Of a stretch of 64,000 bases of DNA, positions 33,671 to 57,300 are shown one piece after another; the first letter of the stretch is position 1, and the number at the start of each line of letters is the position of its first letter. The notes under the pieces are model-generated. The model made no database searches and was not told the origin of the DNA. It worked only from the letters and a program-made list of their open reading frames with translations. The stretch comes from Macrostomum lignano (taxonomy: Eukaryota). The stretch covers positions 26,822 through 90,821 of the forward strand of contig NIVC01003569.1 of NCBI GenBank assembly GCA_002269645.1, given 5' to 3'. A program made the position numbers and the translations under genes.

Positions 33671-35711
33671 GATGGACGGCGAAGCGATGGACGTTCGAGT
33701 GTCCGATTCGGTGAGAGAGAGGCTCTTCCTACAGCAGCCAGCGGATCTGACGGATGCAATCCGGACAGTTAGGCAACTGGAGGCAGCGCAGAAAGCGTCA
33801 GCATCGCAACATAAACCTAAGCCAAGAGGTGGACTGAATGTGTTCTCAACCGCCCAAGAACATCCGGGAGCCGAAGAGGTGCGGCAGCTGAGGGCGAAAA
33901 TGGAGAGGATGGAAGAGACGATCCGCCAGTTGCAGCAGGGCCCCGTCAATGCAGCCGGTCCCCAAAGAGCCGCCGAACCAACCGGTACAGGCCCACACCA
34001 GGACACAGTCGCGTGTCTATCACAAGGCCCTCCACAGGCATCTGGCGCCACCGGAGGCTCGGCTCCGAAAAGGGTCACCTGTTTTCGGTGCGGGAAAACC
34101 GGGCATCTCTCGTTTAATTGCAAGCAGCAGGAAAAAGCCAACAGGAACTCACGTCCTGGAGGCCACTGAGTTCCTGCAATCATCCTGCCTCCACCAGCAG
34201 CACCCAGCATCATCAGCAACTCATCGACAGCACCCAGCATCATCAGCAACTCATCGACAGCACCATGCATCATCAGCAACTCGTGCCCGGCAACAAGGAT
34301 CATCAACCTGGCGCTAGTATCAAGCATCACGAAGTCCCCAGCGCCAGCCTCAACAACCCTAGCATCAAAGGCCGCCATCAAGCTAATGTCATTTTCACCG
34401 GTCACTCTCAGCATGGCATTCAGTTGGGCTCGTCGGCCCTTTATGTGACAGCAACGGTGTCCGGCAGGAAGCTCAATGCGCTCATTGATTCAGGAGCTTC
34501 GTGTACAATCATGTCAGAAGAGGCCTTTGAAAGACTACCGAAACGAGAGATCGAAGTCCTTTCGAAGCTAGACGGCGGTATCAGCATGGCGAACGGCGCT
34601 ACGGTCGAGGTCCTAGGCACAGCTTTACTCTCATTAAGAATCGCGGGCGAGACAATCCCTACGGTCGTGGCGGTCGTCTCGGGAATCAAGTATCAGCTGG
34701 TGATAGGCTCCGACTTCTTCAGGCAGAATAACTGCATTATTGATTACAAGAAGGCAGTCATAAAAAATCAACGAAAGGGCGATCCCGTTCCGGTGGCAAG
34801 AAGAGCATCCAACGACATGTCGGATTTTTGCAGATCGTTATAGCACGCTTCCCCCGGCCATCAGGTTATCTTGCCTGGGAAACTCGACCGGAGATGGAAG
34901 AAGAACAGAGGATGTGTCGGCTTGACAGAAAATTTTGCGGGAAGCACCCTTACTTCTGGACAACGCCTGGTGAAGCCTGTAGGTGCCTACAGAAGTAGGA
35001 CGCGTACCAGTCTGCTTGATGAATCTTACAGACGAGCCTGTGAAGCTGAAAAAGGGCAGTGTGCTAGGTTGGTACTTCCCGCTGGACCCCACGGAGCCAC
35101 TGAACAACTTAAAGATCCACTTAATGGAGCCTACAGAGAAGACCGACTAGCAAGACGAAAACGACGGAGATGAGATCGAACTCATTCCAAACGAGTATGG
35201 TACCTTTGGCCTCTCTCCCGAGGAGGACAAGGAATTTAAAAACTTGGTTAGCAATTTCAAGGACGTGTTCGTTACATCACAGTCACCGTGCCGGAAGACA
35301 AGCGTCGTCGAACACGAGATCGAGACTGGAGCGTCTCGACCGATCAAAATCCCGCCAAGACGATTGCCACCGCATCTCGCGGAGGAGGTGAATCGTCAGA
35401 TTGACGGACTGCTCAAAGACGGACAAATCGAAGAAGCGCAGTCACCTTGGTGTTCGCCGCTCGTCTGTGTGAGGAAGAAAACCGGGGAAATCAGACTTTG
35501 CGTGGACTATAGAAAGCTGAATGAAGTGACGGTGAAAGACGCGGTCCCGATGCCTCGAGTCGATGATGCCCTGGAGGCTCTTCACGGGCGAAGATTTTCT
35601 CCACCATGGACTTGCATAGTGGCTTCTGGCAGGTGAGCGTCAAAGAAGCCGATCGAGGGAAGACTGCATTCGCTGTACCAAATAGAGGCCAGTTCAAATG
35701 GAGGTCATGCC

Positions 35712-38632: not shown

Positions 38633-39891
38633 AAAATTAAAATAACCTAAAGCCTGCTCCGGAAAATTTGCAGTTTTCCCATATAAGTTTCGACGCTGAC
38701 TTGCCAGAATTGTAGGAGTTCACTTGCAACATACAGACAGACAGACAGACAGACAGACGGACAGACAAACATCGTCTGTATAAGGAGATGAAAAAAGTAG
38801 AATGCTACACTTTTGCAATAAAAGCCTTATAAAATTCAACAAAGCAATAATGCTTTCAATTTATATCAAAATATATCAACTTCACTGCTTCTTCAACTCA
38901 AATTTAGCTATCTATTTCGCATAAAAAAACATTATATTCTTCTATCATGCTAGTTCCACCAGTGAACGAGCCGAGAGAACCCGAGGCCCCGCCAGGGGCC
39001 GAGGCGAGTGAATAATTTAGGCTAGAAAGTATTTACGAGTAAATAAGTTAGACTCTAATGCATTTTGAAATTTCACGTTTTTTCGCCAAAAAATGCTCCT
39101 GTTTTGCAACCACTGCACGGATTGAGTTGAGTGAGGTGTCGATCGATAGAAAACTTTTAGATCTATCGAATGAATATACTTTTAAGTGCAGAGATTTTAT
39201 TACTAAGCCGTAAATTAAGGGGAAAGACGATTTTTTCAAAAGTGCTTCTAGGAGATCTCAAAATTCTGGTACACCTTACGAGATACGGCTTCGACATCTG
39301 AAGATCAAAGTTGTAAAACTAAATTTCCTACAAAATAGTATATGGCGCTTTAATTTATTTCGACATATTTATTCAGTTTTGGTGAGTTTTTTGGGTAAAA
39401 AAGTCACCCTCATTTTATTATTTTGCCACTTTTTCCTACAAAGGTTTTTGAGTTTGGGCTTCAAAGCAGTGCAGTTAGATGCGCAATGCAAAAATCTACA
39501 AGTGTCTAAAGTTTTGTTTTCCTACGATTCTGCAGTGCTGAGAAAATCGATAAAGATCGATTTTTCAAAAAATCACATGACTTTCGTATTATTGCTCATT
39601 ATAATTTTGAGAACATGGTGCGAATAATCCGATTTCGAATTTCTATAGCATAGTTGCTGTACTATATTGGTTTGGATTTCCGCCGTCTGATTTGGCTGCT
39701 TTCGGGTTGAAAAATCGATCAGAAATCGATAATTTGTGATTTTTGGCTGATTGGGTGCCAGAAAAATGGGTGATTAAATTTTTTAAAGAATGGTAGATCA
39801 AATGCGGATACTGCAACGAGTTGTACTAATGTCTGGCTAAAATCGACCAAGTTTTTGAGTGTCTGCAACAAGTGCTCATGTGTCAAAAGTG

Positions 39892-41232
39892 ACTACTAAG
39901 GACCCATTTATCCGCCCTTTTTGGAGGTGGGGTGGGTGTCAACCCTCCCCGCCTCTCATTGGCTGGCGCTCGGCGCGCGCGCGCCGCAGGCGCGTGGCGC
40001 CAAGCGCCGACCAGCCGCAGGCGCACCCTCCCGATATGTATGCCCACCCTCCCGATATGTACCCCGATATGTACACCATCCCGATATGTATACCCACCCT
40101 CCAGAGCAGCAGGCGCCCATGCCGCAGACGCCCATGCCGCCGGCACCCCGAGTGTACACTCTCCCAAGTCGCAGGCACCCCGAGTGTACACTCTCCCAAG
40201 TCGCAGGCACCCCGAGTGTACACTCTCCCATGTCGCAGGCGCCCCGAGTGTACACTCCCCCATGCCGCAGGCACCCCGAGTGTACACTCTCCCCAGTACA
40301 CTCTCCCGATATGTAGTCAGCGATATTAGGCTAGTGAAAACTACTTATAGTAGGTGAAATTGCGTATATTTGCATAAAAAAGTAGATAAAACATATTGGT
40401 AGGTGTGAATAATGACGCATAATGCATATTAAAATGTACATATTGGAGCATATGAGCAGCAAAAAACACACAATGTAGGTGCATTTTATCGATATTTTGG
40501 CAGAAAAGTAGGTGAAATAGACAAAATAGTAGGTATAATACACAGAACCTACTCATTAGTGTAGTAGGCGCTTGTAGATGCTAGTATAATGCAGGTGCAT
40601 ACATACACACAATGTAGGTGCAAATTGAGTATAATACAGGAAAATTATAATACATAGCATATAATGTAGGCGCATTTTAAACAATACATTTTGCATATTA
40701 ACTCGCAGGTACAAATTTCAGTGCATAGGGTAAAATACACACACTGCAAATTGAGTATAATGCAGGAAAATTGTGACATATACAACATATGTATGCAAAA
40801 TTAAGCTTATAGGTGCAAAGTAAAATATCAGGCTTCCTAGTAAAGAGACACGCCCCAGAGCCAGGGCCGGGGGATCCTAGCGGAGTACAGTTCAGGTAGG
40901 AGCGTTCCTAGTCTGCAACCCATAGCTTCCAAATAGGGTACGAGGGGCCAATGTTTCGAGAGGGGATCCTCAGTACAGTGCGGTCAGAGAGGAGTAACAT
41001 AGAGAAATTCCTCCCCAAGCCCCAAATAAGGTTTTTTCAAGGGGATCCCAAGTACAGTGAGGGCAGAGAGAAATTCCAATTCCTCCCCAAGCCCCAAATA
41101 AGGTTTTTTCAAGGGGATCCCAAGTACAGTGCGCTCCCTGGTGTCAAATGATGAAGGAATCCCGCCCCCCAATGCACAGTGCGCTCCGGGGTGTTAAATG
41201 AGGAAGGATCCCGCTCAATGTACAGTGGAGGT
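39892..41232 (+). repeat. Left terminal inverted repeat of the pPolB element
   Basis: Reverse complement of 47625-48877. Contains five 32-bp units (CCCCGAGTGTACACT core), CCGATATGTA repeats, AT-rich repeats and GGGATCCC..AGTACAGTG repeats. Confidence 0.93.
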
Positions 41233-41368
41233 GCCAAATGAGTAAGGACCCCTAAGTACAGTGCGGGCGTAAAACCATTTTCATCCCCACGAGTCAAGGG
41301 ATCCCAAGTGGGCACATAGGGGAATCCCAGGCAGGGAGGCGTAAAAAAGATAGATCCTTATCTTTCAC

Positions 41369-44300
41369 TCACTCCCGAAAGCCATACGGGCGGCTAGCGG
41401 CCCCATACACCCTCTTAGTCATTACGCGCTGGAAAGTCTTGTCCATCTCGAGGGTCCGGATTGTACAGCTAGCCTTATCGCGCCTGAACTGGGCCTGGGG
41501 CAGGCGTACAGTCCCGCCGTGGCGCAGAATTTCCTGCAGCTCGTCCTCGCGCTCGGAAATCTCGGGGTGACTCTGATGCCCTTGCACTTGAGCACCGAGT
41601 ACAGCGACCCGTCGGGCTTCTCCACTAAGTACCGGTAGAGCTTGGGGCCTCCCGTGGTGAACTGTACCATGCGGCAGCCAGCAGGTACCTCGTCAGTCCA
41701 CTGCCCCAAACTCGAACCACCCGGAGGCTCGTACTCGCCCGGGGAGCAGCGGTATACAACCCTGGGAGGAGGAGGAGAATAAAGTGTTAAGGGGAGAAAG
41801 AGAGACAGATACAGTGAAAAAATTACTTACGAATCGGTATCGGCGTAAATGACTCGGGTTCCTAGGCCCTCCAGAGCCTCGTAGAGTCGCAGCCGGGCGT
41901 GGGAGGTGGTGAAAACGCCAATAGGTACATTAGCGTACTTGAACGCCCGCTCGCCAGCACCGCCAAATCGGGGCTTGTACTCGAGCATCATGAAGCTCTC
42001 CCCAATTGGCTCGCACGACTTGACCTTGATCGAGGGGTCGGTCAGGCGCTGCAGCCACGCCTCGTAGCTGTCCACAATCTCTGTGGAGGTCAGGTCGTCG
42101 CGCTGGCAGAATTTGCCCCAGAGCCTGCAGGGAAAAATAAATTTTTTTTTGTAAGTAGAAAAACACGGCCCCCACTGCAAGTAGAAAAACTTACGAGTTT
42201 AGAAAAATCTTGGCCACAAAGCGCAAGCCAGGATTCTCCTCCACCTTTTCCAGCCGGACGCCTTCGCGCTCGAAAAAGCTGGCCATGTAGGCAGCCTTGG
42301 CGTCCTCAGCCATCCCCGGCGAACCGCTAGACTCGGCTTTGAGCTTCAAAAAAGTGTTTACATAATCTGCAAACAGGCCCGTGCGAGTCTCGGTCCAATA
42401 GGCCAGGGCATGAACTGACTGCAGCTTGTAACCCAACTGCAGGGCTTTGTGGAGCTCTGGGGTTGACCACGTGCCGCGGAGCATTCTCTCAGCGTCAGTG
42501 TGTGTACACTCGCTGCTGCACTGGGTCTCCATGCAGACGCGGCAGAGGCCGAAAACCAGCTTCTTGTTAATCTTGGCGGGCAGTAGCGGGATGTGGAGAT
42601 TGGTTGGCGGCAGAATCGACACCTCGGCGATGCCAAAATACCGGGCCAGCTGCAGCTCATCCAGTAGATGAGGCTCGGGGTGGTGTACCGGGTGCCCGAC
42701 CGGGTACTTGTCAAACTTGTTGACAGTCGGGTAGAGCGACACCTAGGGGATAAGGATAAGATAAACTCAAACGCATGTCAACTGTGTGTGTACAAGTGTA
42801 CAAACTTACCACATCCCGATAGCGCAGCTCTACAGTCTCGGTGGCCTCGGCGTGCGGGACAAAAGCCTCGGTACGGCCGCCAAACAGGGCTTCCTCCAGG
42901 CGAATAGGCTGCTGGACTGGCGCTCCCTCGTCCTGATAGTCGTGCTCCCACAGAACACGCACATTGTAGGCAGTGGAGAGCAGCCGGGTGAAGCGCTCAG
43001 TCTCCTCATAAATCGCCCGCATTGGCTGGTTCTTGAGCGGGTGCAGCACGTCGCCGTTGGGGAAGCACTTGGGACAGCCATGGTAGAAGCAGCCATGAAA
43101 CTGCAGCACTGTCCTGGTCTCTGGGTCGAAGCCGTCGACCTTACGGCCCATGGCGAAAGCCTCGCCGCCAGAATCGGCTGTCCGCAACCGGCCGCCAAAC
43201 TCGGTTGCATTCAAATGCGCAAGCCAGCACCGCGCCTTGTGCGACTGTACATCGGACCGGCGGGAAATCACCCCAAGAGTGTTGGGCTCCATAAACTTGG
43301 TGGTGAAAACAGCCATAGCCAAGCCCGCAATGGTGTTGGATTGAACAAATGCGTCCAGTCCGCAAATGTCCTTAATCAGGCGGGTGTACTTTAGACAGCC
43401 TTCCCGCAAAATTAACGTGTCCTGCAGGCAGTAGTCCAGGTACTCCTTATTGAAATTAAACACCTGTCCCTCCTGCTTGGCCAGCCAGTCGGCGATGGAG
43501 TCATGCTGCTTATTCTTCTTCCCGCCGTACATATCAATTGAGCAGTAGGGTCCCACGTACCCCCAGTTTTCCGGCTGGTTAAACACGTGCGGGAAATCTC
43601 CTTTGGTCAGTTGGGTGCCCAAACCAAGCGCCTTTGGGAATTGCGCCAGACCAATAGGGATGAAATTGAGGCTGTCCTTGAAGGTGATCTTGTCGCACTT
43701 CATGTACATTAGGCGGCTGTTCTGGAAGATCACTTGCGGCTTCTTCTTGGCCAGTCCGTTGAGTAGGGCGCCGAGCAGGAGGAATGCGTCATACGCAGAG
43801 CCATTGTGCGCAATAGCAATTGCCCCCTGCTTGAACACACTAGTCAGCCAGCAGTAAAATGCATCGATAGAGTGCGGCCCGACAGATACAAACTCTCGCA
43901 TCCCACAGGCACAGTCATTGTGCGAGACACAGCTCGTAAAATCCAGCGCCAGATTGCGTCCCGCAATGCAATTGGCTGAGCTGTGTAGTCCCCCGCACAC
44001 GCTGCAGCGGGGCCTGGGGAAGAGTTTGGGACACGCCTCGCAGGAGGTGGCAGCCGTAACCAAGTGTACCCGGTGCTGCTTGCCAGAGTCCAAGTACGTC
44101 TCGAAATCATAGTAAACATACGGGGCGCTAGACTCTTTGGCTTTTGGCGGGGTGACAAAGCACTCGTGGGTGGCAGTTTCGTCGTACTGCTTGCAGACTG
44201 GGCACTTGGCATAACCACACTGATGCTCAGGGGGCTGGCCTACTTTTAGTTCTTCTAGATAGCCACACGTGCCGCAAACGTGGACCGAATCACAGCGCGA

Positions 44301-46520
44301 TCTGCCGGCCTTATTCTTGCGTTTGTGATTTTCTAGGCACTGAGCATTATAGCAATTTAGCCCGCAATCATGGCATCTTACATATGCGCGGTTTGCCTTA
44401 CAGTTGGAGCCCGGAGTCTTGCATGTACTGCAGGCATCCGCACACTTGTGCTTGGCGTTGGCGCAGTCGTAGGCCATCTCGCACTTGGGGCAGTAGCGCA
44501 CGGAGCCGAAAAACGCAGGCAGCTTGGTAACCACATTAAAGTGCTGCTCGACCAGGTGCAGGTGCAGAATCTCGGTGCCAGGCAGGTTGAAGATGCACCT
44601 GTTGGCCTCCTCTGCGCGGTACACGCGTACACCAAAATCGTGCCCCGGATGCAGCCGGTTCAGGGCACGGATCGCTTCGGGCAGTGCATCCACCCCGAAA
44701 GGACCAGCCTGCGAGACGGTTTGAAGAGTCTGTGTGGAGGGTAAAATATTTCTTTTAGTGTTCCTTATCGTAAAATTTCTTATCAGAGTATGGTTCTTTT
44801 AGTATTCCCTGATACTGTGTAAAAAATCTTATCAAAAAATATATCTTTTAGTACTCCATGATACTGTGTAAAAATTCTTTTAGTATTCCCTGATACTGCG
44901 TAAAAATTCTTTTAGTATTCCCTGATACTGCGTAAAAATTCTTTTAGTATTCCCTGATACTGCGTAAAAATTCTTTTAGTATTCCCTGATACTGCGTAAA
45001 AATTCTTATCAGAAAAATACTAGAAACTTACCGAGTAGAGACCCGCTTCGATTTGTAGCTCAGCCACCAGCTTAGTCTGCTTGGGCGAATTGACCTTGAT
45101 TGTGCGCCACACCTTCTCGGTGATGGACTTGGCCACGAATTGCAGGTAGGCGCAGGCCACGACCAGAGCGCGCAGCAGGCATCTCTTGTCCGAGTTGGTG
45201 ATGCGGACATAGTGCTTTGAAAAAGCGTGCCTCTCTTCTAGATGCTTGTTCTCGAGAGCACATCCACCTCGAGGCACCCAGGCCTTTAGCAACCGGATAG
45301 AAAAGTTGCCCGTCAGGACAGTGGCATCCGACTGTACAATCTTGTTGATGTGCTTAAACAACAATTCAGCCGTCATGCGGGATGCACGCACCGGGGGAGT
45401 ATGGGCCGCTTTGAGCATATTGTCGCTCTCGAATTTCGCGGCCATAAAGTCATCACCAGCCAAATCTTGCTTGAAAACTTCGAGCATGTCGGCAAACACC
45501 TCCCGCAAATCTTCGGTGTTGGTAATACGCACCACATACTCGACACCCTTTGCCCTAAACTTGGGCAGGTCACGCTGATTATCCAGCCGGGCCGTAAAAC
45601 CTGCATGGGGGGAATGGGGGAGTGTGAGTCAGCCCGGGTCTGTGTGGGAAATGGGGGGCGGGATAACTCACCCGGTCCGGTAACAGATTCCGGCTGTGTT
45701 GGCGGGACAAACGCGTCTGAAAAAACACAAGGAGATAAAAAAACCAGAAGAATCTGTCATTTTCCTGGCCCCAGCGTGTTTCCCCGCCCTAGCCCCAGTA
45801 ATTTCTTAACAGAGTTTACTCTGCTGTCCCCGCAGCAACTCTCTGCAATTTCTTATCTGCACCCCCGCTGCAGCCTGTCGCAGCAGTCTTTGTTTACTCA
45901 CCCCTGCAACTCTCTGTCGCAGCAATTTGCACCTAGCTGCAGCCTGTCTGGGTAGCGCCCTATCTGCAGCCCCAGTCTGTCCCAGCAACTCTCTGCCCCC
46001 ACCCGGCTGTAACTTGTCTAGCCCGCCCCAACGATTCTGCAGCAATTTCTTATCTGCCGCAGCACCCTAGCAACTGTCTGTTTTTGCAGCAATTTCTTAT
46101 CAGCACACCCCTCCCTGTCTAGACAACACCCCACCCCAGTCTTTGTTTACTCACCCCTGCAACTCTCTGTCGCAGCAATTTGCACCCCAGCTGCAGCCTG
46201 TCTGGACAACACCCCCCTAGCAGCAATTTCTTATCAGCACACACCCGGCTGAAACTTGTCTAGCCCTCCCCTGCAACTCTCTGTTACAGACCCTGCCGCA
46301 GCACCCCACCCTAGCAACTCCAGTCTAGACCCCTGCAGCTGTCGCAGCAGTCTTTGTTGTTTACTCTGCGGTCCCACAGACCCTGCAGCTGCTGCTGCTG
46401 CTCAGCCCCTACCCCCACCCTAGCAACTACAGTCTAGACAGAAATTAATTAAAACTTACCATAAAGACGTTGCCTCTTGTCAGCCAGGAAAGCAGTTGCG
46501 GTGGCGCTGCGTTTAGCCAT
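41369..46520 (-). CDS. Protein-primed family B DNA polymerase (Polinton/adintovirus type), six exons, ~1260 aa, one apparent 1-nt frameshift near the C-terminus
   Basis: Exons 46460-46520, 45032-45600, 42810-44729, 42195-42742, 41831-42124 and 41369-41761, joined by GTAAG..AG introns in matching phases. Motifs: Exo YYDFET, HNGSAYD, DSLNF, YCLQDT; Pol A YRDV|VSLYP, Pol B KIFLNS|LWGKF, Pol C YADTDS|VVY, then GPKLY and KCKGI. Exon total is 3785 nt, one short of a multiple of 3; the frame changes near 41565. Confidence 0.93.
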
Positions 46521-46764
46521 TTTGCAAACAGAGAGTGTGAGAGAGCGAGCGGAGAGAAGGATTATCTCTCTACCCTGGCTCTGGGGGTCTGTATATATAC
46601 TAAAAAATCTGCTCAGCTCGCCTGTTATTGGATAAATCGCCAAAAACCAACCAAAATCATCAAAAATCACCCCCAAAATCACCACCCACCCCACCCTCCA
46701 TCCGGGGGTATATAAGGCGCTGCACGGCTGTCAGAGAGCTCTCTGCTGCTGCTGCTGCTAAATC
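46521..46764. promoter_or_regulatory. Putative compact bidirectional promoter between pPolB and the PC4-like gene
   Basis: 244-bp gap between divergent ATGs, with TATA-like GTATATATAC (46591-46600) and GGTATATAAGG (~46708-46718). Confidence 0.5.
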
Positions 46765-47262
46765 ATGTCTTCTATCTCTCTATACGAAAACTTTGTGGCG
46801 CGGAAGCCCACATTTGAAACTGAACACAACTTGATTGAAATTCGGCGTCTCTACACCAACGAGGCTGGAGTGTGGAAGGACGGCTTCCCTGCAATCTACT
46901 TGAGCGAGCCAGAGTGGAAGAAGCTCGAAGCTGCGCGCCCTGACCTGGAGGCTGCTGCCCGCCTTCACGTGAACAAGCGGGTCCTGTTGGGCAATTTCAA
47001 GGCAGTTGAAGCTTCGCGAGGGAGGATCCGTTTGCTGCGCAATTGGCTCAATCAGGACCCAAAGTTTAATTGGCGCTACACGATCGAATTCACGCCTGAA
47101 CTGTGGCGCCGGATGTTTGCCGCCCGTTTGGACAAGCTCTTCAAGCTGGCACCCGAGGTCCCACCGTCTGCCAAGCGAGCCAAGACAGAGGACAATCTGC
47201 AGGACTGCCTTGACAGCATCAAACCCTACCCTTGGGGAAATCTGTTTGACGAGGGTTGCTAA
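46765..47262 (+). CDS. Tandem PC4-like ssDNA-binding protein (165 aa; the C-terminus may be incomplete)
   Basis: LIEIRRLY..EAGVWKDGFPAIYLSEPEWKKL and RIRLLRNWL...RYTIEFTPELWRRM each resemble the PC4 pattern vDIR.y...G...g.kGIsLt.eqW..L. PSAKRAK is NLS-like. Assignment is from visual pattern match only. Confidence 0.65.
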   Translation: MSSISLYENFVARKPTFETEHNLIEIRRLYTNEAGVWKDGFPAIYLSEPEWKKLEAARPDLEAAARLHVNKRVLLGNFKAVEASRGRIRLLRNWLNQDPKFNWRYTIEFTPELWRRMFAARLDKLFKLAPEVPPSAKRAKTEDNLQDCLDSIKPYPWGNLFDEGC

Positions 47263-47624
47263 TTGAGGCGTGCCGCATCCGTACAGCGCGAACCCGATTT
47301 TTGGTAAGCTTAATTTCATATAAATCGTATATAAATTACATATAATCTGTCTACATTGAATATTTTTTACTTTGACAGATGTTTCGAGAGCGCTGATGAG
47401 GAGGAGACTGCCCTGGCTGAAGATCGAGCTCGAGTTTGACTGATAAGGGAATTTCTCTTTGTACTCTATTACTCTCTGCCTGCACTGTACTTGGGCCTCG
47501 CAACACACTGGGGGATCCCTCAACTTGGAGAGCTACCCTCTGGGGATCCACTAAAACCCTCATTTGGGGTGGGAGCTGCGGTAAAGTTTGACTGGAATTC
47601 TCTTTGTATGCGGTCTGTTACTCT

Positions 47625-48877
47625 ACCTCCACTGTACATTGGGGCGGGATCCTTCCTCATTTAACACCCCGGAGCGCACTGTGCATTGGGGGGCGGGATT
47701 CCTTCATCATTTGACACCAGGGAGCGCACTGTACTTGGGATCCCCTTGAAAAAACCTTATTTGGGACTTGGGGAGAAATTTCTCTATGTTACTCCTCTCT
47801 GACCGCACTGTACTGAGGATCCCCTCTCGAAACATTGGCCCCTCGTACCCTATTTGGAAGCTATGGGTTGCAGACTAGGAACGCTCCTACCTGAACTGTA
47901 CTTGGGATCCCCCGGCCCTGGGAGGAATTTCTCTATGTTACTCCGCCCGCACTGTACATTGGGATCCCCCGGCCCTGACTCTGGGGGCGTGTCTCTTTAC
48001 TAGGAAGCCTGATATTTTACTTTGCACCTACATTATATGCTTAATTTTGCATACATATGTTGTATTATACTCAATTTGCAGTGTGTGTATTTTATCCTAT
48101 GCACTGAAATTTGTACCTGCGGGTTATTATGCAAAAATGTATCGTTTAAAATGCGCCTACATTATATGCTATGTAATTTTCTTGTATTATACTCAATTTG
48201 CACCTACATTGTGTGTATGTATGCACCTGCATTATACTAGCATCTACAAGCGCCTACTACACTAATGAGTAGGTTCTGTGTATTATACCTACTATTTTGT
48301 CTATTTCACCTACTTTTCTGCCAAAATATCGATAAAATGCACCTACATTGTGTGTTTTTTGCTGCTCATATGCTCCAATATGTACATTTTAATATGCATT
48401 ATGCGTCATTATTCACACCTACCAATATGTTTTATCTACTTTTTTATGCAAATATACGCAATTTCACCTACTATAAGTAGTTTTCACTAGCCTAATATCG
48501 CTGACTACATATCGGGAGAGTGTACTGGGGAGAGTGTACACTCGGGGTGCCTGCGACTTGGGAGAGTGTACACTCGGGGTGCCTGCGACTTGGGAGAGTG
48601 TACACTCGGGGTGCCGGCGGCATGGGCGTCTGCGGCATGGGCGCCTGCTGCTCTGGAGGGTGGGTATACATATCGGGAGGGTGTACATATCGGGGTACAT
48701 ATCGGGGTACATATCGGGAGGGTGGTCATACATATCGGGAGGGTGCGCCTGCGGCTGGTCGGCGCTTGGCGCCACGCGCCTGCGGCGCGCGCGCGCCGAG
48801 CGCCAGCCAATGAGAGGCGGGGAGGGTTGACACCCACCCCACCTCCAAAAAGGGCGGATAAATGGGTCCTTAGTAGT
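47625..48877 (-). repeat. Right terminal inverted repeat of the pPolB element
   Basis: Reverse complement of 39892-41232, with three rather than five 32-bp units. Confidence 0.93.
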
Positions 48878-51689
48878 AAAGTGATTGGAAATCGATCAGA
48901 GTAGTGATTTTTTAATATTTTGCTTGAAATCAGGCAAAAAACGCAATAGGACGGCAATATTTTAATGACGTCTGATTTCCCACATAACGAGGCACATTTG
49001 TGTCCAATTTCTAGAGATTCGGTTCATTGGGTAAAAAATTATCGATAAAAAACTGAAAACTTGACTTTTTACTTTTATGTTAGTTCCGGGGCTATTTAAA
49101 CTGGAAATGGTAGGAATTTTGCACTGAAATCAATGCACAGTGTTCCATATAGTTAATTTAACAAATTTCTTGAATTTCATAACCATTCGATGTTTTTTTC
49201 ATGTAAAAAATGCCTTTTTTGCATCGAAATTCATCACATTAAGCTGCATACCGCTTTGCATAATCTGCATTTGCATGCGATTGCTTGCATAGCTTTGGCG
49301 TTAGGCTAAGTTAAGCTGGTTAGAAAGGAAAGGAAAGGAAAGGAAAGGAAGGAATATTCGTACATACAATGTACACACCCGTCCCTTCCAAGTGGGGTTG
49401 TGGCAACGCGAGAGGGCTTGGCGGCTTGGTTTGGAGGGCGTGTAATAGAGCTTCATTTGACTCGCGCACAGACCAAGGCAAATTAGATCGATAAACGGGC
49501 GTCACGTGATTTGACGCCTGATTTGCCTGATTTCAAGCAAAATATTAAAAAATCACTACTCTGATCGATTTCCAATCACTTTTGACACATGAGCACTTGT
49601 TGCAGACACTCAAAAACTTGGTCGATTTTAGCCAGACATTAGTACAACTCGTTGCAGTATCCGCATTTGATCTACCATTCTTTAAAAAATTTAATCACCC
49701 ATTTTTCTGGCACCCAATCAGCCAAAAATCACAAATTATCGATTTCTGATCGATTTTTCAACCCGAAAGCAGCCAAATCAGACGGCGGAAATCCAAACCA
49801 ATATAGTACAGCAACTATGCTATAGAAATTCGAAATCGGATTATTCGCACCATGTTCTCAAAATTATAATGAGCAATAATACGAAAGTCATGTGATTTTT
49901 TGAAAAATCGATCTTTATCGATTTTCTCAGCACTGCAGAATCGTAGGAAAACAAAACTTTAGACACTTGTAGATTTTTGCATTGCGCATCTAACTGCACT
50001 GCTTTGAAGCCCAAACTCAAAAACCTTTGTAGGAAAAAGTGGCAAAATAATAAAATGAGGGTGACTTTTTTACCCAAAAAACTCACCAAAACTGAATAAA
50101 TATGTCGAAATAAATTAAAGCGCCATATACTATTTTGTAGGAAATTTAGTTTTACAACTTTGATCTTCAGATGTCGAAGCCGTATCTCGTAAGGTGTACC
50201 AGAATTTTGAGATCTCCTAGAAGCACTTTTGAAAAAATCGTCTTTCCCCTTAATTTACGGCTTAGTAATAAAATCTCTGCACTTAAAAGTATATTCATTC
50301 GATAGATCTAAAAGTTTTCTATCGATCGATACCTCACTCAACTCAATCCGTGCAGTGGTTGCAAAACAGGAGCATTTTTTGGCGAAAAAACGTGAAATTT
50401 CAAAATGCATTAGAGTCTAACTTATTTACTCGTAAATACTTTCTAGCCTTCGGCGGCGCCGGGCTCGGCTCGTTCACTGGTGGAACTAGGTTTATTAAGT
50501 AGTATGAAGACCCACGTCTAAAAAGAAGCCCGTTCACTGGTGGCAAAAAGACGTGTGCGTCTTCATACTACTTGTGTATTTACGCAAAAATTTGGCCTCC
50601 AGCCCAATTTCCACAAAAGCCAAATGTAATGTCCTTCTACTCTAGTTGTCCATGAATAAATGTTGGCAATGTCCTAGTTTCCCGCGTTAAATTAGGATCT
50701 GTATAAAAGCAGGGCACCATTGGCACATTGGACACCCCTTATGTTAACAAAAATCGAGTTTTGATCGTTGTTTTGCTTGAATAAATATACTTTGGCTTTC
50801 GAATGAAAATGTAAATATTTATTTATAATTGCACTTTTTCATATACTTCTAACAACCATGAGATTGGTAGTGTAGCGACTTTGAAATGAAAAAGGTAGAG
50901 CTAGGCGGTGGTTCGCCCTTGCTTGCTTCTTTGTTTGGCACTTGAGTTGCTCGAATATCAAAGAGGCTTGGAGCAGATGCTGGTTTAGCTACTGTATATT
51001 TATACTATAATTTGTCCTTCCGGAAATTTCTAGAATCATTCTAGTGCGGTAAAACAAACTGTATAGTAAGTATCGTACGCACGGTATTCATATTTTGTAT
51101 GATGATGAATTACAGTAAATGAATATTTATTGAGTAGAAATATTTACTACGAGATTAGAAATAGATAGATAAAGAATTTTCAAGAATTTAACTCGTACTG
51201 TATAGCAGAAATTTCTGGAAGTAAACATCATACGTTATAGAACTTTCGCGAAGGTCACTACAACAGTCCCCCGCGGAAGATGGAGTCCCTATGAGTCAGT
51301 TGATCGCGGATGAGTATGTACAAGATGAAACGCACTGCATGTAGGTCTGCGGATGAAAATTGTACAATGAGAAAGCGTCAGCTGTTAGTGGGTAAAGAGT
51401 TAGTCAAAAGTAGAAATAGTCATTTTTAGGTTTAAACAAGCTGTTGAAACCCGCGGATTTTGAACCCGGGGAATTCCAATCCCCGGAACTACTTTTGCAT
51501 GTATTCTGAAATCTAAGGCCATACACAAACAAAAACTTGTTAATAGTTAGTAGGATAGAGGTAGACATAAAATGGAGCACATTCGTGTAAAATTAGGATT
51601 TGAGGCAAACATTGATATTGTTGTCTGGGGTACTGCGCAGAATGTCAGGCAATGTCTGTCTGACTCTAAAACATGTATGGGCAAACTCT

Positions 51690-52334
51690 GGCCTCTCCCT
51701 GCCTCTCCCTACGTCCCTTGGATCCTTTAAAATTTCTATCGTCTCTTCTGTTTCCTCTCTTCTCTCTCGTCCCTCGTCTCTCCTCTCTCATCTCTCCCCT
51801 CTTCTCTCGTATCTTTCCTCATCTCTCTTCTCTTTCATCTCTCTTCTCTTTCATCTCTCTTATCTCATCTCATGTCTCTTCTTTTCTCTCTCCTCTCCTC
51901 TCTCCTCTCTACTTTTTCGTTTTCTCTCTCCTCTCCTCTCTCCTCTCTACTCTTTCGTTTTCTCTCTCCTCTCCTCTCTCCTCTCCCATCTTTTCTCGTA
52001 TCTTCCCTCATCTCTCTTTTCTTTCATTTCTCTTATCTCATCTCTTCCCTCTTCTTTTCTCTCTCCTCTCCTCTCTCCTCTCCCCCCTCTTCTCTCGTCT
52101 CTTCCTTCTCCTCTCTATTCTTTTCTCTCTTCTCTTAACTGTCTCCTCTACTCTCTCATCTCTCCTCTCTACTCGTTCCTCTCTCTCTCTCCTCTCATCT
52201 CTTCTTTCCTCTCTCCTCTCTCCCCTCTTCTCTCGTCTCTTCCCTCACCTCTTTTTTCTCTCTCGCCTTTGGTCTTTCATCTTTCCTTTCTTTTCTTTTA
52301 TCTTTTCTCTCTTATCTCTTCTCATTTCTCTCTG

Positions 52335-52414
<80 letters not shown>

Positions 52415-53170
52415 GTCTTTCTCTCTTATCTCTCCTCCTCTCTCTACTCTCTCCCCTCTCCATTCTCCTCTTTCCTCTCCTCTCTCCTCACTCACTTCTC
52501 TACATTTGTCTCTTTCTCTCCTCTCGTCTCCGTAATCTCTTATCTCTTCTCTGTTCTCTCTACTCTCCCATCTTTCATCTGTTCACTCTCGTCTCTGCTC
52601 TCTCATCCCCCTCTTTAATCTGGCATCTCAGTCTTATATGTTCTCTCACCTCTCTCCTCTGTACTCTTTTCTTTCCCCTCTTTTGACTCCTCACTTTCCT
52701 TTCTCCTTACTTTTTTCTCTTCTCTTCCCTTTTCTATACTCTCTCTCCCTTTCTTCTCTCTCTCGAGTCTCCTCTCTCCTTTATCTCTCATCTCTCATTT
52801 CTCATCTCTCCTTCCACCTCTCTCATCTCTACAACCTTGGAGATGTAGAGATGTATCTTTATCTCTTCTCTCTTCCCCAGTGGTGGGAGTGAGGAGTGCC
52901 CATTTTTTTCGCGCCTACGATTTTTTTTCGCGCCGCAAGCTTTTTTGTGTCAATCTTTTGTGTCAACTCTCTGCTCTCCTCTCTGCTGTCTCCTCTCATC
53001 TGCAGCTCTCTGCTCTCATCTCTACTCTCTCCTCTCGCTTTTCCTCTCTCCCTCTTCTCCCCCTCTCTCTCATCGTCCTCACCCCCTCATCTCTCCTATT
53101 ATCTTTTATATTTTCTTTTATCCCCTCTTTCGCTTCTCCTCTCTTCGAATCGTCTATTCCTTCTTTCCAC
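51690..53170. repeat. Pyrimidine-rich (CT/CTCTC) low-complexity tract including a (CT)n run at ~52337-52410
   Basis: The plus strand is almost entirely C and T. Confidence 0.95.
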
Positions 53171-54350: not shown

Positions 54351-57300
54351 GCACTCTACGGCCGCTCCTGGTACGTACTGGTGATGGTGGTGGTTGCTGC
54401 TGATGAATCGCGGTTCGCGTCCTGGTTCGCTCCGGCTCTGTCTGCTGCGAACCTGCCTCCGTCGGTGCTGTCGTGCTACGGTCGCTAATGTCGTCTTCCC
54501 TGGTGCCCGACTGAGATGTTGATTCCTGTGGCACCGTCGACTCGCTGTTGGGAGGGTCGGCTGTCGGAGATGCTCGTCGTCTGTCAGGTGCAGACTGCGG
54601 TGTTGATCGACAAGGCTTCAGGCGGTCGATGGAGTCTCCTGACGTCTCCTGACTCCTGACGTCCTGCGGCTGTTTCGATGATGAAAAACTTCGGCAGTCG
54701 CTTCACTACCGGGTAGGGACCTTGGTACGGTGCTTCCAAAGGCTTCATTGTTCGGTCGACTCGGACCCAAACCTTCTCGGCTGTCTCGAGGTCGCTCGGG
54801 ATGTGCTTAGGCCGATCTGGTGGAGGTCTCGTGTCGTCAAGCAGGTTATCCAGGCGCAGTCGAATCATCTCGGGTGTTGGATCCTCGGCTGTCGTCAGGA
54901 CGCGCGGCATCATCGGGTGTTCTCCGGTCAGACGAGTGAATGGGCTTATGCCGTCGTCGTTTGGTGAGATGCGCATCGCAAGTAGCGCTAGAGGAAGATT
55001 CTCCAGCCAGGAGTTCCGCGAGCCTTTAGAATGGCTTTCAGGGTGCGGTGGGCCCGCTCCACTTTCCCGTTCGTCTGCGGGTGATACGCTGTTGTGCGCA
55101 GTCGGTGAAATCCGATGTCCTTAGCGACTCGGTTGAAAAACTCGGCTTCGAACTGCGGTCCTCGGTCGGTGACGATGTACAGCGGAACTCCAAAACGCGA
55201 AATCCGGGTAGATATGAATGCTGAGGCTACACTCTCTGCGGTGACGGATTCCAGCGGCGTGGCCTCGATCCAGCTGGTGCTACGGTCGACCATCGTGAGT
55301 AGGTAACGAGGAGTGAGACCGCAGGAGATGTCGTACTTCCGGTCGGGTACAGGCAGCGGACCGACGATGTCGATGTGCACAACTTCGAGTCGTTTCGATG
55401 GTAGGTCGAACGCAGAACTGCCGGCTGTCGTGTGGCGCCCAATCTTAGTTCGTTGGCAGGTTGCGCACGCTCGACAGAACTGTTTGATGGCATCTCGCAT
55501 GTTCGGCCAGAAGTATCGGGTTGTTAGCAGGCTGGCGGTCTTGCGGACGCCGTAGTGGCCAAGCTGGTGGAACTGCCGAATGAGCGGCTGTTGTAGCGAA
55601 TCTGGGACGACTGGACGAGGATAGTGACTGGAGGTATCGCACAACAATGTCTGCTTTCCGTCGAACTCATAGAATCGGCAGTTGTTGCTTGGTTGCATCC
55701 CGATTCGTTTCTGCTCTGCGGCAATGGCTGGCAAGTCGACGGGTTCCTCTAGGGATGTCTCCTCTGCGGCTGCAACCGTTTGCGTCGGCGAACCTCCGGA
55801 CTCGGATAACCTTGATAGGGCGTCGGCGACTATATTGTCAGAGCCGCGGATATAGACCACATCGGTGACGTATTCGGATATGATGCTCAGATAACGCTGG
55901 TTCCTGTCGGAGGTACCCTGGCTGCCGCTGTGGAAGGCCTGAACAAGGGGCTTGTGATCCGTAAAGATCGTGACCTGACGGCCCTCGATAAGGCTCCGGA
56001 AGTGAAGAACTGCCAGGTAGACTGCTAGGAGTTCTCGATCGAAAGCAGAGTAGGCTCGCTGCGTCGGCAAAAGGGTCTTGCTGAACAGCCCGAGCGGGAC
56101 TGGCGACTGACCGTCGGCTTGGTGTAGAGCGGCTCCCACGCAGGTTGCCGAGGCATCGGTGACCAGGCTGTAGGACGAACACTGCGGGTCGGGATGGTGA
56201 AGCAATTGATACGATCGGCTAGCTTACCCTTCAGCTGATTGAACGCGTCCTCGTGCTGCGATGTCCACTCGTACGTGCGCGGCGCCTTGAGTGACTTGGT
56301 GACCAGGTCTTGCAGCGGTGCAGCGGTGTGGCTGAAATGCGGGATGAAGCGGCGGTAGAACCCGATTGTGCCGAGGAACCTGCGCAGGGCCTGTGCGTTG
56401 CGAGGTGCCGGCCACTCACGGATGGCGTCAACCTTGGATTCGAGCGGCCGGATCCCGTCTGCTGTTACCTGGTGTCCAAGAAACGTGATTTCCTTCTGCA
56501 TGAAAGCACACTTGGTGAGCTGGACCTTCAAACCGTGTTGTTCAAGGCGTCGGAGTACGCTTTCGAGCACTCGGAGGTGGTCTTCCTCGTCCTTGGAGTA
56601 GACTAGCAAGTCGTCCACGTAGGCGAGCACGCCGTCGATGCCACGGAGCACAGTGTCAATGAATCGCTGAAACGTTTGACCTGCATTACGAAGACCAAAT
56701 GGCATGCGGATCCACTCGTAAAGACCGAACGGTGTGATGATTGCTGTCTTCGGTATGTCCTCTTCGGCGATTGGAATTTGATGATAGGCTCGCACCAGAT
56801 CCAGCTTGGAGAAAACCTTGGCACCGTGGAGATACCGTGTGAAACACTGGATATGAGGCACGGGATAATGATCCGGCTGGGTGATCTTGTTTAGCTGTCG
56901 ATAGTCTCCGCAGGGTCGCCACTTACCATTGGGTTTGCCGTCGTCCTTCTTAGGAGCCATGTGCAGCGGTGATGCCCAAGAGCTCGACGACGGCCGGAGG
57001 TACCCGGCTTCCAAGAGTTGCCGAAACTCTTCTCGGGCGATGGCGAGCTTCTCCGGATGCAGCTGTCGGGCTTTGGCGTGCGTCGGTGGTCTATCGCTCG
57101 TGATGATGTGGTGCTTCGTGTCATGTTTAACTTCGGTGGCCGGAGGTAGCCTCCCTCCTTCGACGCACGTGAAGGTGCTGCGGTAACGATCGATGAGTGC
57201 GCGTACACGAGGATCGCAGTGGTCTGGATACGCCAGCGACACGGCGAGTTCATCGAGGTCCACTGCGGTAACCGGCAGAGATGGCGTATGTAGTCTCGTT

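What the first reader, a model, noticed from the sequence alone, without database searches (positions are those of the whole stretch)
39892..48877. Two-gene Polinton-like replicon: protein-primed polymerase plus SSB, with no integrase or virion genes
Seen in sequence: exact boundaries (ACTACT termini, 6-bp TSD AAAGTG, and the empty site preserved in the other arm of the host palindrome), ~1.3 kb TIRs, and a 6.4 kb core fully accounted for by a pPolB gene and a PC4-like gene. Established: canonical Polintons/Mavericks are ~15-20 kb, make 6-bp TSDs with a retroviral-type integrase, and encode capsids, a packaging ATPase and a protease. Inference: this is a replication-competent but integration- and packaging-dependent satellite, or a nuclear linear plasmid-like replicon integrated by a helper's integrase. 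Both genes look nearly intact and sit divergently around a compact promoter, which argues for a stable design rather than random decay. I cannot confirm that such a family is undescribed.
Basis: partly seen in the sequence, partly recalled or inferred. Interest (0 to 1): 0.92.

Follow-up and report, generated by a model that had tools for sequence, protein, structure and literature searches.

The report
Integrase-less two-gene Polinton derivative in flatworm
A 9-kb virus-like mobile element, freshly inserted near a chromosome end of the flatworm Macrostomum lignano, keeps only the DNA-copying genes of its Polinton/adintovirus relatives (a protein-primed polymerase and a single-strand-DNA binding protein). 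It has no integrase or capsid genes, so it probably needs a helper to insert.

Summary
Window 39892-48877 is an 8,986-bp insertion with 1.25-1.34-kb terminal inverted repeats (98.9% identical), ACTACT termini and a 6-bp duplication, AAAGTG. An uninterrupted empty site survives in the other arm of a host palindrome.

The core holds two divergent genes around a ~245-bp promoter region with two TATA boxes.
- **Polymerase:** a 7-exon protein-primed family-B polymerase. It carries vOTU-type Cys/His motifs, a Zn-rich module, exonuclease motifs, a Vsr-like nuclease insert and polymerase motifs. It has one frameshift.
- **ORF2:** a PC4-like single-strand-DNA-binding protein. Its best viral structural match is the 'MOSUB' protein of a lancelet adintovirus.

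No integrase, ATPase or capsid remnant was found. The host is Macrostomum lignano, which has about 45 polymerase and 13 or more PC4-like gene models; 12 of the listed models carry both regions together.

Bivalve relatives (40-44% polymerase identity) are 9-10-kb elements with AGTAGT termini and 6-bp duplications, and they do encode an rve-chromodomain integrase.

Best reading: an integrase-less, capsid-less derivative of the Vsr-bearing pPolB2 Polinton lineage that keeps the replication module and is integrated in trans. Whether this exact layout is an amplified family could not be tested, because the host genome was not searchable. I rate it a new variant of a known kind, of moderate interest.

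The parts
39886..39891 (.). Left copy of the 6-bp target-site duplication, AAAGTG
39892..41232 (+). Left terminal inverted repeat (1,341 bp). It begins ACTACTAAGGACCC and contains 12-, 15-, 32- and 50-bp tandem repeats plus repeated GTACAGTG(C/A)G motifs in its inner part.
41369..46520 (-). [quoted passage not shown] It has 7 exons and 6 GT-AG introns, with the ATG at 46520. The product as it stands is 1,258 aa: an N-terminal region (TP by analogy), vOTU-type Cys/His motifs, a Zn-rich module, Exo I/II, a Vsr-like insert, polymerase motifs A, B and C, and KxY. Breaks: one frameshift relative to paralogues, and no in-frame stop in the modelled exons.
42900..43172 (-). Approximate span of the Vsr-like (PD-(D/E)xK) nuclease domain, inserted between the exonuclease and polymerase domains. 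It contains the FHGCFYHGC motif.
   Evidence: The profile hits only the three Vsr entries of the PDB (E about 0.011). PMC10748475 describes the same insertion in mollusc and marine-nematode pPolB2.
46521..46764 (.). Divergent promoter region. TATA-like boxes read from the sequence: TATATAAGG near 46708 for ORF2 (plus strand) and TATATATA near 46598 for the polymerase (minus strand).
   Evidence: Read directly. No transcription data.
46765..47439 (+). ORF2, a PC4/MoSub1-like single-strand-DNA-binding protein. The unspliced product is 165 aa (46765-47262). An optional GT-AG intron (47244-47378) gives the acidic tail CFESADEEETALAEDRARV seen in M. lignano gene models. The fold shows two beta-sheet-plus-helix halves (a tandem PC4-like arrangement) followed by a disordered tail with a KRAK motif.
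47625..48877 (-). Right terminal inverted repeat (1,253 bp), 98.9% identical to the left one over 1,199 aligned columns.
48878..48883 (.). Right copy of the 6-bp target-site duplication, AAAGTG
49577..49582 (.). Empty site. A single CACTTT (= AAAGTG) lies in the uninterrupted other arm of the host palindrome. The arms are 39019-39891 plus 48884-48938 versus 49522-50449, and they are 100% identical.
   Evidence: (I1, I11).

Best explanation
This is an integrated copy of a capsid-less, integrase-less derivative of the Polinton/Maverick-adintovirus lineage, in the polymerase clade called pPolB2 with a Vsr nuclease insert. The host is Macrostomum lignano.

It keeps only the genome-replication module:
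- a polymerase with an N-terminal region that in Polintons is the terminal protein, vOTU-type protease motifs, a 3'-5' exonuclease, a Vsr-like insert and a family-B polymerase domain;
- a tandem PC4-like single-strand-DNA-binding protein.

Both genes are driven from a short divergent promoter region and are processed as nuclear genes (6 + 1 spliceosomal introns).

**Shown:** the anatomy, the exact insertion with a 6-bp duplication and an empty site, the domain and fold assignments, the multi-copy status of both genes, and their recurrent adjacency.

**Inferred:**
- The element is copied by protein-primed, strand-displacement synthesis started at the doubled ACT-ACT terminus (a sliding or jumping-back start, as in adenovirus and phi29), with ORF2 coating the displaced strand.
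- Insertion is carried out by an rve-type integrase supplied in trans by a related element. Relatives with the same end structure and 6-bp duplications encode such an integrase.
- This particular copy may be polymerase-defective, because it carries one frameshift.
For: **Boundaries, duplication, empty site:**

**Polymerase:**
- PF03175 at E=1e-43 on the product of exons joined as they stand, with all six introns GT-AG.
- The same junctions are reproduced gap-free by 1, 9, 27, 20, 36 and 22 independent M. lignano gene models.
- The vOTU-type motifs N-x-D-x-x-C-x-x-R-A and H-F/Y-x-V/L-x-T, and nine Zn-ligand positions, are invariant across flatworm, bivalve, beetle and metagenome homologues. This matches the TP + vOTU architecture described for Polinton polymerases (PMC11161782).
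- The inserted domain hits only the Vsr endonucleases in the PDB. This matches the Vsr-bearing pPolB2 of molluscs and a marine nematode (PMC10748475).

**ORF2:**
- The family profile hits human PC4 at E=3e-9.
- 5 of 7 family members hit Pfam PC4.
- The AlphaFold model has pLDDT about 90 over residues 1-129.
- The top PDB matches are PC4 and MoSub1, with target-normalised TM about 0.8.
- The top viral match is 'MOSUB' of Branchiostoma lancelet adintovirus (E=1.2e-4, 158 columns).

**No integrase, ATPase or capsid signal:**

**Relatives:**
- Pecten maximus: 9.3-kb element, AGTAGT ends, duplication GCTGAC.
- Mya arenaria: 10.0-kb element, AGTAGT ends, duplication GAAGAA.
- Both encode an rve + chromodomain integrase, an A32/IVa2-like P-loop ORF and this polymerase.

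**Multi-copy status:** about 45 polymerase and 13 or more ORF2 gene models in M. lignano at 59-100% identity. 12 of the listed models combine polymerase and ORF2-region sequence.
Against: - No second genomic copy with the same two-gene boundaries could be examined. The M. lignano genome is not in any searchable collection here, and the window holds no other copy.
- No helper integrase was identified in the host.
- The polymerase/ORF2 adjacency would also be expected if both genes sat next to each other inside a full-length element.
- The polymerase of this copy carries one frameshift. This could be an assembly error or a real defect.
- The TP and vOTU assignments rest on motif conservation and the literature; a sequence profile found no OTU structure.
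- The Vsr hit is weak (E about 0.011).
- No PC4-like gene was found in any of ten related loci from other organisms, so the gene pairing is so far documented only in this species.
Confidence: 0.65

Rival explanations
1. One-off internal-deletion remnant. A full-length Polinton/adintovirus-like element lost its integrase and virion module by deletion in this copy only. The two-gene layout is accidental and not a propagating lineage.
For: - Deletion derivatives of this lineage exist. Mercenaria carries a 3.8-kb copy with AGTAGT ends and the duplication CATCAA that retains only the Vsr + polymerase half of the gene.
- The Pecten ATPase-like ORF is split into three pieces.
- No other copy's boundaries could be examined.
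- This copy has a frameshift.
Against: - The insertion has an intact 6-bp duplication and an empty site in a 100%-identical paralogous arm. The element therefore transposed in this short form, or the deletion happened after a very recent insertion without touching either TIR.
- Only 136 nt and 185 nt separate the gene ends from the TIRs, both genes keep their own TATA box and start codon, and no pseudogene debris was found.
- ORF2 is itself multi-copy, with two subfamilies.
Confidence: 0.15
2. Self-sufficient, integrase-independent element. Insertion is carried out by the element's own proteins, for example staggered nicking by the Vsr-like nuclease domain of the polymerase followed by end joining or target-primed synthesis. 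Alternatively, host repair captures a terminal-protein-capped linear DNA at a staggered break. No helper is needed.
For: - The Vsr-like domain keeps the residues that are invariant in the family: D60, G74, C75, H78, C80, C83 and W122 of alignment A6.
- No integrase was found in cis.
- The element is compact, with intact genes.
Against: - Relatives with the same Vsr-bearing polymerase, the same end type and the same 6-bp duplication do encode an rve-chromodomain integrase. The integrase therefore explains the 6-bp duplication more simply.
- Nuclease inserts in Polinton polymerases are interpreted in the literature as homing-endonuclease or intein-type invasions (PMC11161782).
- Vsr-type enzymes nick one strand at mismatches and are not known to act as recombinases.
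Confidence: 0.1
3. Satellite of an exogenous or endogenous adintovirus. The element replicates with its own polymerase but is packaged, spread between cells or animals, and integrated by a helper virus's capsid, ATPase and integrase.
For: - The element keeps the replication module while lacking the morphogenesis module.
- It has long TIRs with many internal repeats that could serve as cis signals.
- ORF2's closest viral structural match is an adintovirus protein.
Against: - No helper was seen.
- Six plus one spliceosomal introns are shared across paralogues. The beetle and Mya polymerase homologues are each a single uninterrupted ORF. This points to long intragenomic residence rather than a virus-like transmission cycle.
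- Nothing here bears on packaging.
Confidence: 0.07
4. Not a mobile element at all: an assembly artefact, or a pair of domesticated host genes that happen to lie between inverted repeats.
For: - The surrounding 100%-identical palindrome and the subtelomeric position are places where assemblies err.
Against: - The element has 1.2-kb TIRs with the doubled-trinucleotide start typical of relatives in three bivalves, an exact 6-bp duplication and an empty site.
- Dozens of diverged paralogues exist.
Confidence: 0.03

Closest known systems
Polintons/Mavericks of the pPolB2 class with a Vsr nuclease insert (molluscs, marine nematode; Jeong et al. 2023, PMC10748475)
   Same: - A protein-primed family-B polymerase with a Vsr-like domain between the exonuclease and polymerase parts.
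- Best non-flatworm matches are mollusc proteins at 40-44% identity.
- TIRs and a 6-bp target-site duplication.
- Termini made of a doubled trinucleotide.
   Different: - No rve integrase, capsid proteins, packaging ATPase or protease.
- 9 kb instead of 15-20 kb.
- TIRs of 1.3 kb.
- A polymerase gene with six spliceosomal introns.
- Platyhelminthes is not among the phyla listed for integrase-linked pPolB2 in that paper.
9-10-kb capsid-less elements found here in Pecten maximus (L004 3244-12546) and Mya arenaria (L006 2225-12221)
   Same: - Similar size, with the polymerase occupying one half and the other genes divergent from it.
- TIRs starting with a doubled trinucleotide (AGTAGT) followed by an AGG-containing motif.
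- 6-bp duplications.
   Different: - They encode an rve + chromodomain integrase and a zinc-finger/P-loop (A32/IVa2-like) ORF, and they have no PC4-like gene.
- Their TIRs are about 300 bp.
- The Mya polymerase is a single uninterrupted ORF; the Pecten polymerase is split across several ORFs.
Adintoviruses (Adintoviridae; Starrett et al. 2021, PMC8502044)
   Same: - An animal-associated protein-primed polymerase lineage.
- A PC4/MoSub1-like accessory protein ('MOSUB' of the lancelet adintovirus) is the best viral structural match of ORF2.
   Different: - Adintoviruses carry integrase and a full virion module.
- No sequence-level link between ORF2 and MOSUB was tested; the match is structural only.
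Linear plasmids with terminal proteins (yeast cytoplasmic killer plasmids, fungal and plant mitochondrial plasmids); from my own knowledge and PMC11161782
   Same: - TIR-bounded linear replicon logic, with a terminal protein fused to the polymerase.
- No capsid or integrase.
- The yeast plasmids also encode an SSB.
   Different: - This element is integrated in a nuclear chromosome with a target-site duplication.
- It has nuclear-type promoters and spliceosomal introns.
- It encodes no RNA polymerase.
- No extrachromosomal form was shown.
PC4/Sub1 family (Pfam PF02229) and the phage T5 PC4-like protein
   Same: - The fold and the sequence profile of the ORF2 N-terminal half match.
- The T5 homologue appears lower in the fold list.
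   Different: - ORF2 has two such halves in one chain plus a disordered tail.
- It sits in a mobile element next to a protein-primed polymerase.
- DNA binding was not tested.

Membership tests
Polinton/Maverick (self-synthesizing transposon) | [quoted passage not shown] | tested here: met
   PF03175 at E=1e-43 on the spliced product. Exo I/II, motifs A, B and C and KxY are present.
Polinton/Maverick (self-synthesizing transposon) | Retrovirus-like (rve) integrase encoded in the element | tested here: not met
   No rve hit in the Pfam scans of the ORFs, the spliced product or the plus-strand frames. tblastn with the integrases of the Pecten and Mya relatives finds nothing inside the element. 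The only hit, at E=1e-5, is an LTR-retrotransposon integrase at 23649-24152.
Polinton/Maverick (self-synthesizing transposon) | Terminal inverted repeats and a 6-bp target-site duplication | tested here: met
Polinton/Maverick (self-synthesizing transposon) | Virion module: double and single jelly-roll capsid proteins, packaging ATPase, maturation protease | tested here: not met
   No Pfam signal. No match to the relatives' ATPase-like ORF. Only 321 nt of the core lie outside the two genes and the promoter region. Capsid profiles as such were not available, so this rests mainly on the lack of coding space.
pPolB2 class with Vsr insert (PMC10748475) | Vsr-type endonuclease domain inserted in the polymerase | tested here: met
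   The profile of the inserted domain hits only 1odg, 1vsr and 1cw0 (E 0.011-0.016), with the hGCfWH motif aligned. Individual family members give weak Pfam hits to Vsr, DUF559 and MTES_1575. The match is weak but specific.
pPolB2 class with Vsr insert (PMC10748475) | Phylogenetic placement inside the pPolB2 clade | not tested
   Only similarity ranking was done. The best non-flatworm hits are bivalve and gastropod proteins at 40-44% identity. No tree with pPolB1, pPolB2 and plasmid references was built, because reference sequences were not obtainable by name.
Polinton-type polymerase architecture (TP + vOTU + Exo + Pol; PMC11161782) | vOTU-like cysteine protease domain with catalytic Cys and His | tested here: inconclusive
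   Cys176 and His288 sit in motifs that are invariant across six distant homologues.
Polinton-type polymerase architecture (TP + vOTU + Exo + Pol; PMC11161782) | N-terminal terminal-protein domain that primes replication | not testable with these tools
   A conserved N-terminal region exists (invariant D86, Q125-S126, P145, G147). Its priming role can only be inferred.
PC4/Sub1 ssDNA-binding fold (PF02229) | PC4 sequence profile and beta-sheet-plus-helix fold | tested here: met
   Profile versus PDB PC4 at E=3e-9. Pfam PC4 in 5 of 7 members, best 1e-6. Foldseek probability 1.00, rmsd 1.7-2.0 A over 66 columns.
PC4/Sub1 ssDNA-binding fold (PF02229) | Binding of single-stranded DNA | not testable with these tools
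   Inferred from the fold only.
Adintoviridae | Adenovirus-like virion genes plus an rve integrase | tested here: not met
   Same negative searches as above. Only the polymerase and a MOSUB-like protein are shared.
Terminal-protein linear plasmids | Extrachromosomal linear DNA with protein-capped 5' ends | not testable with these tools
   Only an integrated copy is seen.

The most novel reading that the evidence does not exclude
Macrostomum harbours an amplifying lineage of nuclear 'replication-only' Polinton derivatives that have shed both the integrase and the virion module yet still transpose. The lineage consists of the polymerase plus a tandem-PC4 SSB between long TIRs. It would be a living intermediate between Polintons/adintoviruses and terminal-protein linear plasmids. 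Its insertion would depend either on a helper integrase or on an integrase-independent route. Together with the 3-gene bivalve elements, it would define a capsid-less branch of self-synthesizing transposons.
Probability: 0.3. Interest if true: 0.8.

Novelty: new variant of a known kind. Interest (0 to 1): 0.55.

Why it matters
Polintons are defined by a polymerase plus an integrase and are now viewed as viruses because of their capsid genes. An element that keeps only the replication module, and was nevertheless inserted recently and precisely, bears on three questions.
- Which functions of a self-synthesizing transposon must act in cis (replication) and which can be borrowed in trans (integration, packaging)?
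- How could capsid-less linear plasmids have arisen from Polinton-like ancestors?
- What is the role of PC4-like proteins, annotated but unexplained in adintoviruses? The pairing here suggests they serve as the SSB of protein-primed replication.

It also extends the Vsr-bearing pPolB2 lineage to flatworms, and it shows that this lineage can acquire a full set of spliceosomal introns. Practically, dozens of M. lignano 'DNA-directed DNA polymerase' gene models, and oddly named ORF2 models, are copies of this element. Some are mis-joined with antisense ORF2 sequence.

Tried and rejected
- **Reaching the host genome.** Exact look-ups of ORF2 and of the M. lignano model P0043 found nothing. All other M. 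lignano hits are UniRef-only, without contigs.
- **Window self-search.** No further copy or solo TIR lies in the window.
- **Six-frame Pfam via DNA references.** I repeated it for the three plus-strand frames with stops marked X, and found nothing. The minus frames were covered instead by ORF scans, by the spliced product, and by tblastn with the relatives' integrase and ATPase-like proteins.
- **AlphaFold of ORF2 with only close paralogues.** It failed (pLDDT 36). Adding four distant homologues fixed it.
- **OTU assignment by profile versus PDB.** Negative.
- **A same-length 165-aa ORF at 33672-34169.** Unrelated; it is a gag-like zinc knuckle.
- **Distant metagenomic polymerase hits (L001, L002, P0041).** They gave no useful context.
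- **Kalilo-type integration.** I considered and rejected that the host palindrome was generated by the insertion. The element lies inside one arm, not at the centre, and the other arm holds the empty site.
- **Rfam and tRNA scans of the element.** Empty.
- **Literature.** No paper in the library links Macrostomum with Polintons or Mavericks.

Full report
**Setting.** The window begins with a (CCCTAA)n telomere array at 1-6722. The finding lies about 33 kb inside it, in subtelomeric DNA. That region also holds an ankyrin gene, pieces of a P4-ATPase gene, and two Ty3/gypsy retrotransposons. All close protein matches are to Macrostomum lignano at up to 97-100% identity. The host is therefore this flatworm or a very close relative.

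**Check of the observation.** The repeat finder shows inverted repeats across 39892-41214 and 47644-48877. A global alignment sets the TIRs at 39892-41232 and 47625-48877. 1186 of 1199 aligned columns are identical, and about ten indels are mostly copy-number differences of 12- to 50-bp tandem repeats. Both ends read ACTACTAAGGACCC. AAAGTG flanks both ends.

The element sits in one arm of a host palindrome whose arms are 100% identical (I1 and I11). The other arm, read in reverse complement, passes through a single AAAGTG without interruption. This proves the exact boundaries and the 6-bp target-site duplication. It also shows that the insertion is younger than the inverted duplication, or younger than its last homogenisation.

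**The polymerase gene.** The bacterial-code ORF list breaks the minus strand into several ORFs, which carry Pfam PF03175 in pieces. The interruptions are introns. Strong donors (GTAAGT or GTGAGT) are followed 67-743 nt later by pyrimidine-rich AG acceptors. I joined the seven exons as they stand: 46520-46460, 45716-45672, 45600-45032, 44729-42810, 42742-42195, 42124-41831, and 41761 onward. This gives an uninterrupted 1,258-aa product from an ATG, which scores PF03175 at E=1e-43. The six junctions are reproduced gap-free by 1, 9, 27, 20, 36 and 22 independent M. lignano gene models respectively. The intron set is therefore shared by the family.

The product has these features:
- Exo I (YYDFETY), Exo II (AHNGSAYD), motif A (DVVSLYP), motif B (KIFLNSLWGKF), motif C (YADTDS) and KLY.
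- Upstream motifs N-x-D-x-x-C-x-x-R-A and H-F/Y-x-V/L-x-T, and a nine-position Cys/His metal-binding pattern. All are invariant in an alignment with homologues from two bivalves, a beetle and two further contigs. This agrees with the TP + vOTU + Exo + Pol architecture described for Polinton polymerases (PMC11161782). A sequence profile did not retrieve an OTU structure, so I treat the vOTU fold as likely but untested.
- A domain with FHGCFYHGC between the exonuclease and polymerase parts. Its family profile matches only the three Vsr endonuclease entries of the PDB, at E about 0.011. Exactly such an insertion defines a subgroup of the pPolB2 polymerases of mollusc and marine-nematode Polintons (PMC10748475).

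Breaks: compared with at least nine paralogue models, this copy has one frameshift. There are no in-frame stops in the modelled exons, and all recognised catalytic motifs are in frame. I cannot tell whether the frameshift is real or an assembly error.

**The second gene.** ORF2 (46765-47262, plus strand, 165 aa) gave only a sub-threshold PC4 hint on its own. It has its own M. lignano gene models. Four of these show a splice that removes 47244-47378 and adds the acidic tail CFESADEEETALAEDRARV, which is present in the window in the right frame.

An exhaustive search of 1.84 billion representative proteins found only nine relatives, four of them distant. With those four:
- the family profile hits the DNA-binding domain of human PC4 at E=3e-9;
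- 5 of 7 members reach Pfam PC4;
- AlphaFold gives a confident model for residues 1-129;
- Foldseek puts PC4 and MoSub1 structures first.

The model has two beta-sheet-plus-helix halves. Whole-length weaker matches to PUR-alpha and Whirly-type proteins fit a tandem arrangement. In the viral structure library the best match, over 158 columns, is the protein annotated 'MOSUB' of Branchiostoma lancelet adintovirus (E=1.2e-4). A PC4/MoSub1-like gene is thus already a recognised, though unexplained, accessory gene in the animal branch of this virus group.

Nine M. lignano polymerase models start with sequence that maps antisense to ORF2. I regard this as mis-joining. The plus strand has the TATA box, the ATG, the GT-AG intron and the homologues. 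My alternative first exon (MAKRSATATAFLADKRQRLY) aligns with a KRQRL motif at the same place in the bivalve polymerases.

**What is absent.** The core is 6,392 bp. The two genes plus the 244-bp promoter region leave 136 nt and 185 nt next to the TIRs. Pfam scans found no integrase, ATPase, protease or capsid signal. These covered the ORFs, the spliced product and the three plus-strand frames. tblastn with the integrase and ATPase-like proteins of the closest foreign elements found nothing better than E=0.3 inside the element. There is no tRNA or Rfam match.

**Relatives.** The polymerase domain has hundreds of relatives at about 35-44% identity in bivalves, gastropods, beetles, a grasshopper, echinoderms and many unnamed contigs.

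| Host and locus | Element | Ends and duplication | Content |
|---|---|---|---|
| Pecten maximus (L004 3244-12546) | 9.3 kb, TIRs ~300 bp | AGTAGT, GCTGAC | rve + chromodomain integrase, ATPase-like pieces, polymerase split across several ORFs |
| Mya arenaria (L006 2225-12221) | 10.0 kb, TIRs 294 bp | AGTAGT, GAAGAA | same integrase, intact 536-aa zinc-finger/P-loop ORF with weak Pox_A32 similarity, intact 1,406-aa polymerase |
| Mercenaria (L003) | 3.8-kb deletion derivative | AGTAGT, CATCAA | only the Vsr + polymerase half of the gene |

The integrases of Pecten and Mya are about 49% identical. The lineage therefore has three constant traits: a doubled trinucleotide at the termini, a 6-bp duplication and, where complete, an rve integrase. 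None of ten related loci has a PC4-like ORF.

**How it most likely works.** The shown facts are the anatomy and the recent, precise insertion. The rest is inference from established knowledge of protein-primed replication. In adenovirus and phi29, priming occurs on an internal template base of a terminal repeat and is followed by jumping or sliding back. The polymerase, primed by its own N-terminal domain, would start at the ACT-ACT terminus and copy the element by strand displacement. ORF2 would coat the displaced strand, the role played by dedicated SSBs in phi29, adenovirus, PRD1 and the yeast linear plasmids. The repeated motifs inside the long TIRs are candidates for protein-binding sites.

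The 6-bp duplication is best explained by an rve-type integrase acting in trans, because relatives with the same ends and the same duplication length carry one in cis. The shared introns and TATA-type promoters indicate long residence as a nuclear element.

**Family or accident.** M. lignano has about 45 polymerase models and at least 13 ORF2 models. These span 59-100% identity, and the ORF2 models fall into a short and a long subfamily. Twelve of the listed models contain both polymerase and ORF2-region sequence. None of the extended models carries integrase, ATPase or capsid domains. This shows a multi-copy family with a recurrent gene pair. It does not show that other copies end at the TIRs in the same way. 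That needs a genome census, which I could not run.

**Comparison and novelty.** By the usual definition (polymerase plus integrase) the element fails Polinton membership on the integrase and virion features. It meets the polymerase, TIR and duplication features. It works like a non-autonomous member of that lineage that has kept replication rather than integration. This is the reverse of ordinary non-autonomous DNA transposons, which keep only the ends. In content it resembles terminal-protein linear plasmids, but it is chromosomal, intron-bearing and flanked by a duplication. No paper in the library describes Polintons in Macrostomum or a polymerase-plus-PC4 element. Its parts are all known. 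I therefore rate it a new variant of a known kind, with interest 0.55.

Noticed in passing
window 1-6722 (and 7313-7336): A telomere array (CCCTAA)n, 95% perfect over the first 7 kb. The window starts at a chromosome end and the element is subtelomeric. The 1,078-aa 'ORF' at 3523-6759 is an artefact of the repeat.
   Followed up: partly
window 39019-39891 + 48884-48938 versus 49522-50449: A host palindrome of about 930-bp arms, 100% identical, with a 583-bp spacer. Just outside the arms both flanks again share an inverted CAGTGAACGAGCCGAG. It may be another foldback-type repeat or a very young inverted duplication.
   Followed up: partly
L004 3244-12546 (Pecten maximus LR736849.1) and L006 2225-12221 (Mya arenaria CP111018.1): Conserved 9-10-kb capsid-less three-gene elements in two distant bivalves. 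Each holds an rve + chromodomain integrase, a zinc-finger/P-loop ORF with weak A32/IVa2 similarity, and a Vsr-bearing protein-primed polymerase. They have ~300-bp TIRs, AGTAGT termini and 6-bp duplications. I did not find this short architecture described in the papers read.
   Followed up: partly
L003 8341-12160 (Mercenaria mercenaria JAIXLV010001941.1): A 3.8-kb deletion derivative of the same lineage (AGTAGT ends, duplication CATCAA) that keeps only the Vsr + polymerase half of the gene. Several annotated mollusc proteins of about 505 aa (P0054-P0063) start at a Met inside the Vsr domain.
   Followed up: partly
L005 7955-11551 (Anoplophora glabripennis KZ487698.1): A solitary, uninterrupted 1,198-aa polymerase ORF of this family in a beetle. 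No other ORF of 150 aa or more and no inverted repeat lie in the 12 kb held.
   Followed up: no
M. lignano UniRef models P0004, P0006, P0022, P0024-P0026, P0028, P0032, P0035, P0027, P0172: Public gene models join polymerase exons to sequence antisense to ORF2, or nest polymerase pieces between the two ORF2 exons. ORF2 models carry unrelated automatic names ('Replication endonuclease', 'TEX11 protein', 'ParB'). These are probably annotation artefacts of this repeat family.
   Followed up: partly
window 44844-45007 and 45717-46459: Polymerase intron 3 holds five copies of a 32-bp tandem repeat. Intron 1 (743 nt) is built of repeats about 250 bp apart. Four of the six donors read GTAAGTTT.
   Followed up: no
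window 20937-24200 (+) and 54988-58576 (-): Two Ty3/gypsy-type retrotransposon bodies (protease, RT, RNase H, integrase). A gag-like zinc-knuckle ORF lies at 33672-34169, in a GC-rich block at 32-36 kb.
   Followed up: no
window 51742-52604: A CT-rich degenerate tandem array (period 12-14, about 60 copies). It explains the strong GC and AT skew of that stretch.
   Followed up: no
L008 8262-10017 and L009 7370-9125 (JGI metagenome contigs): A related polymerase gene is interrupted by a 1.7-kb insertion bounded by 333-bp inverted repeats (a nested small TIR element). An rve integrase lies upstream on the same strand.
   Followed up: no
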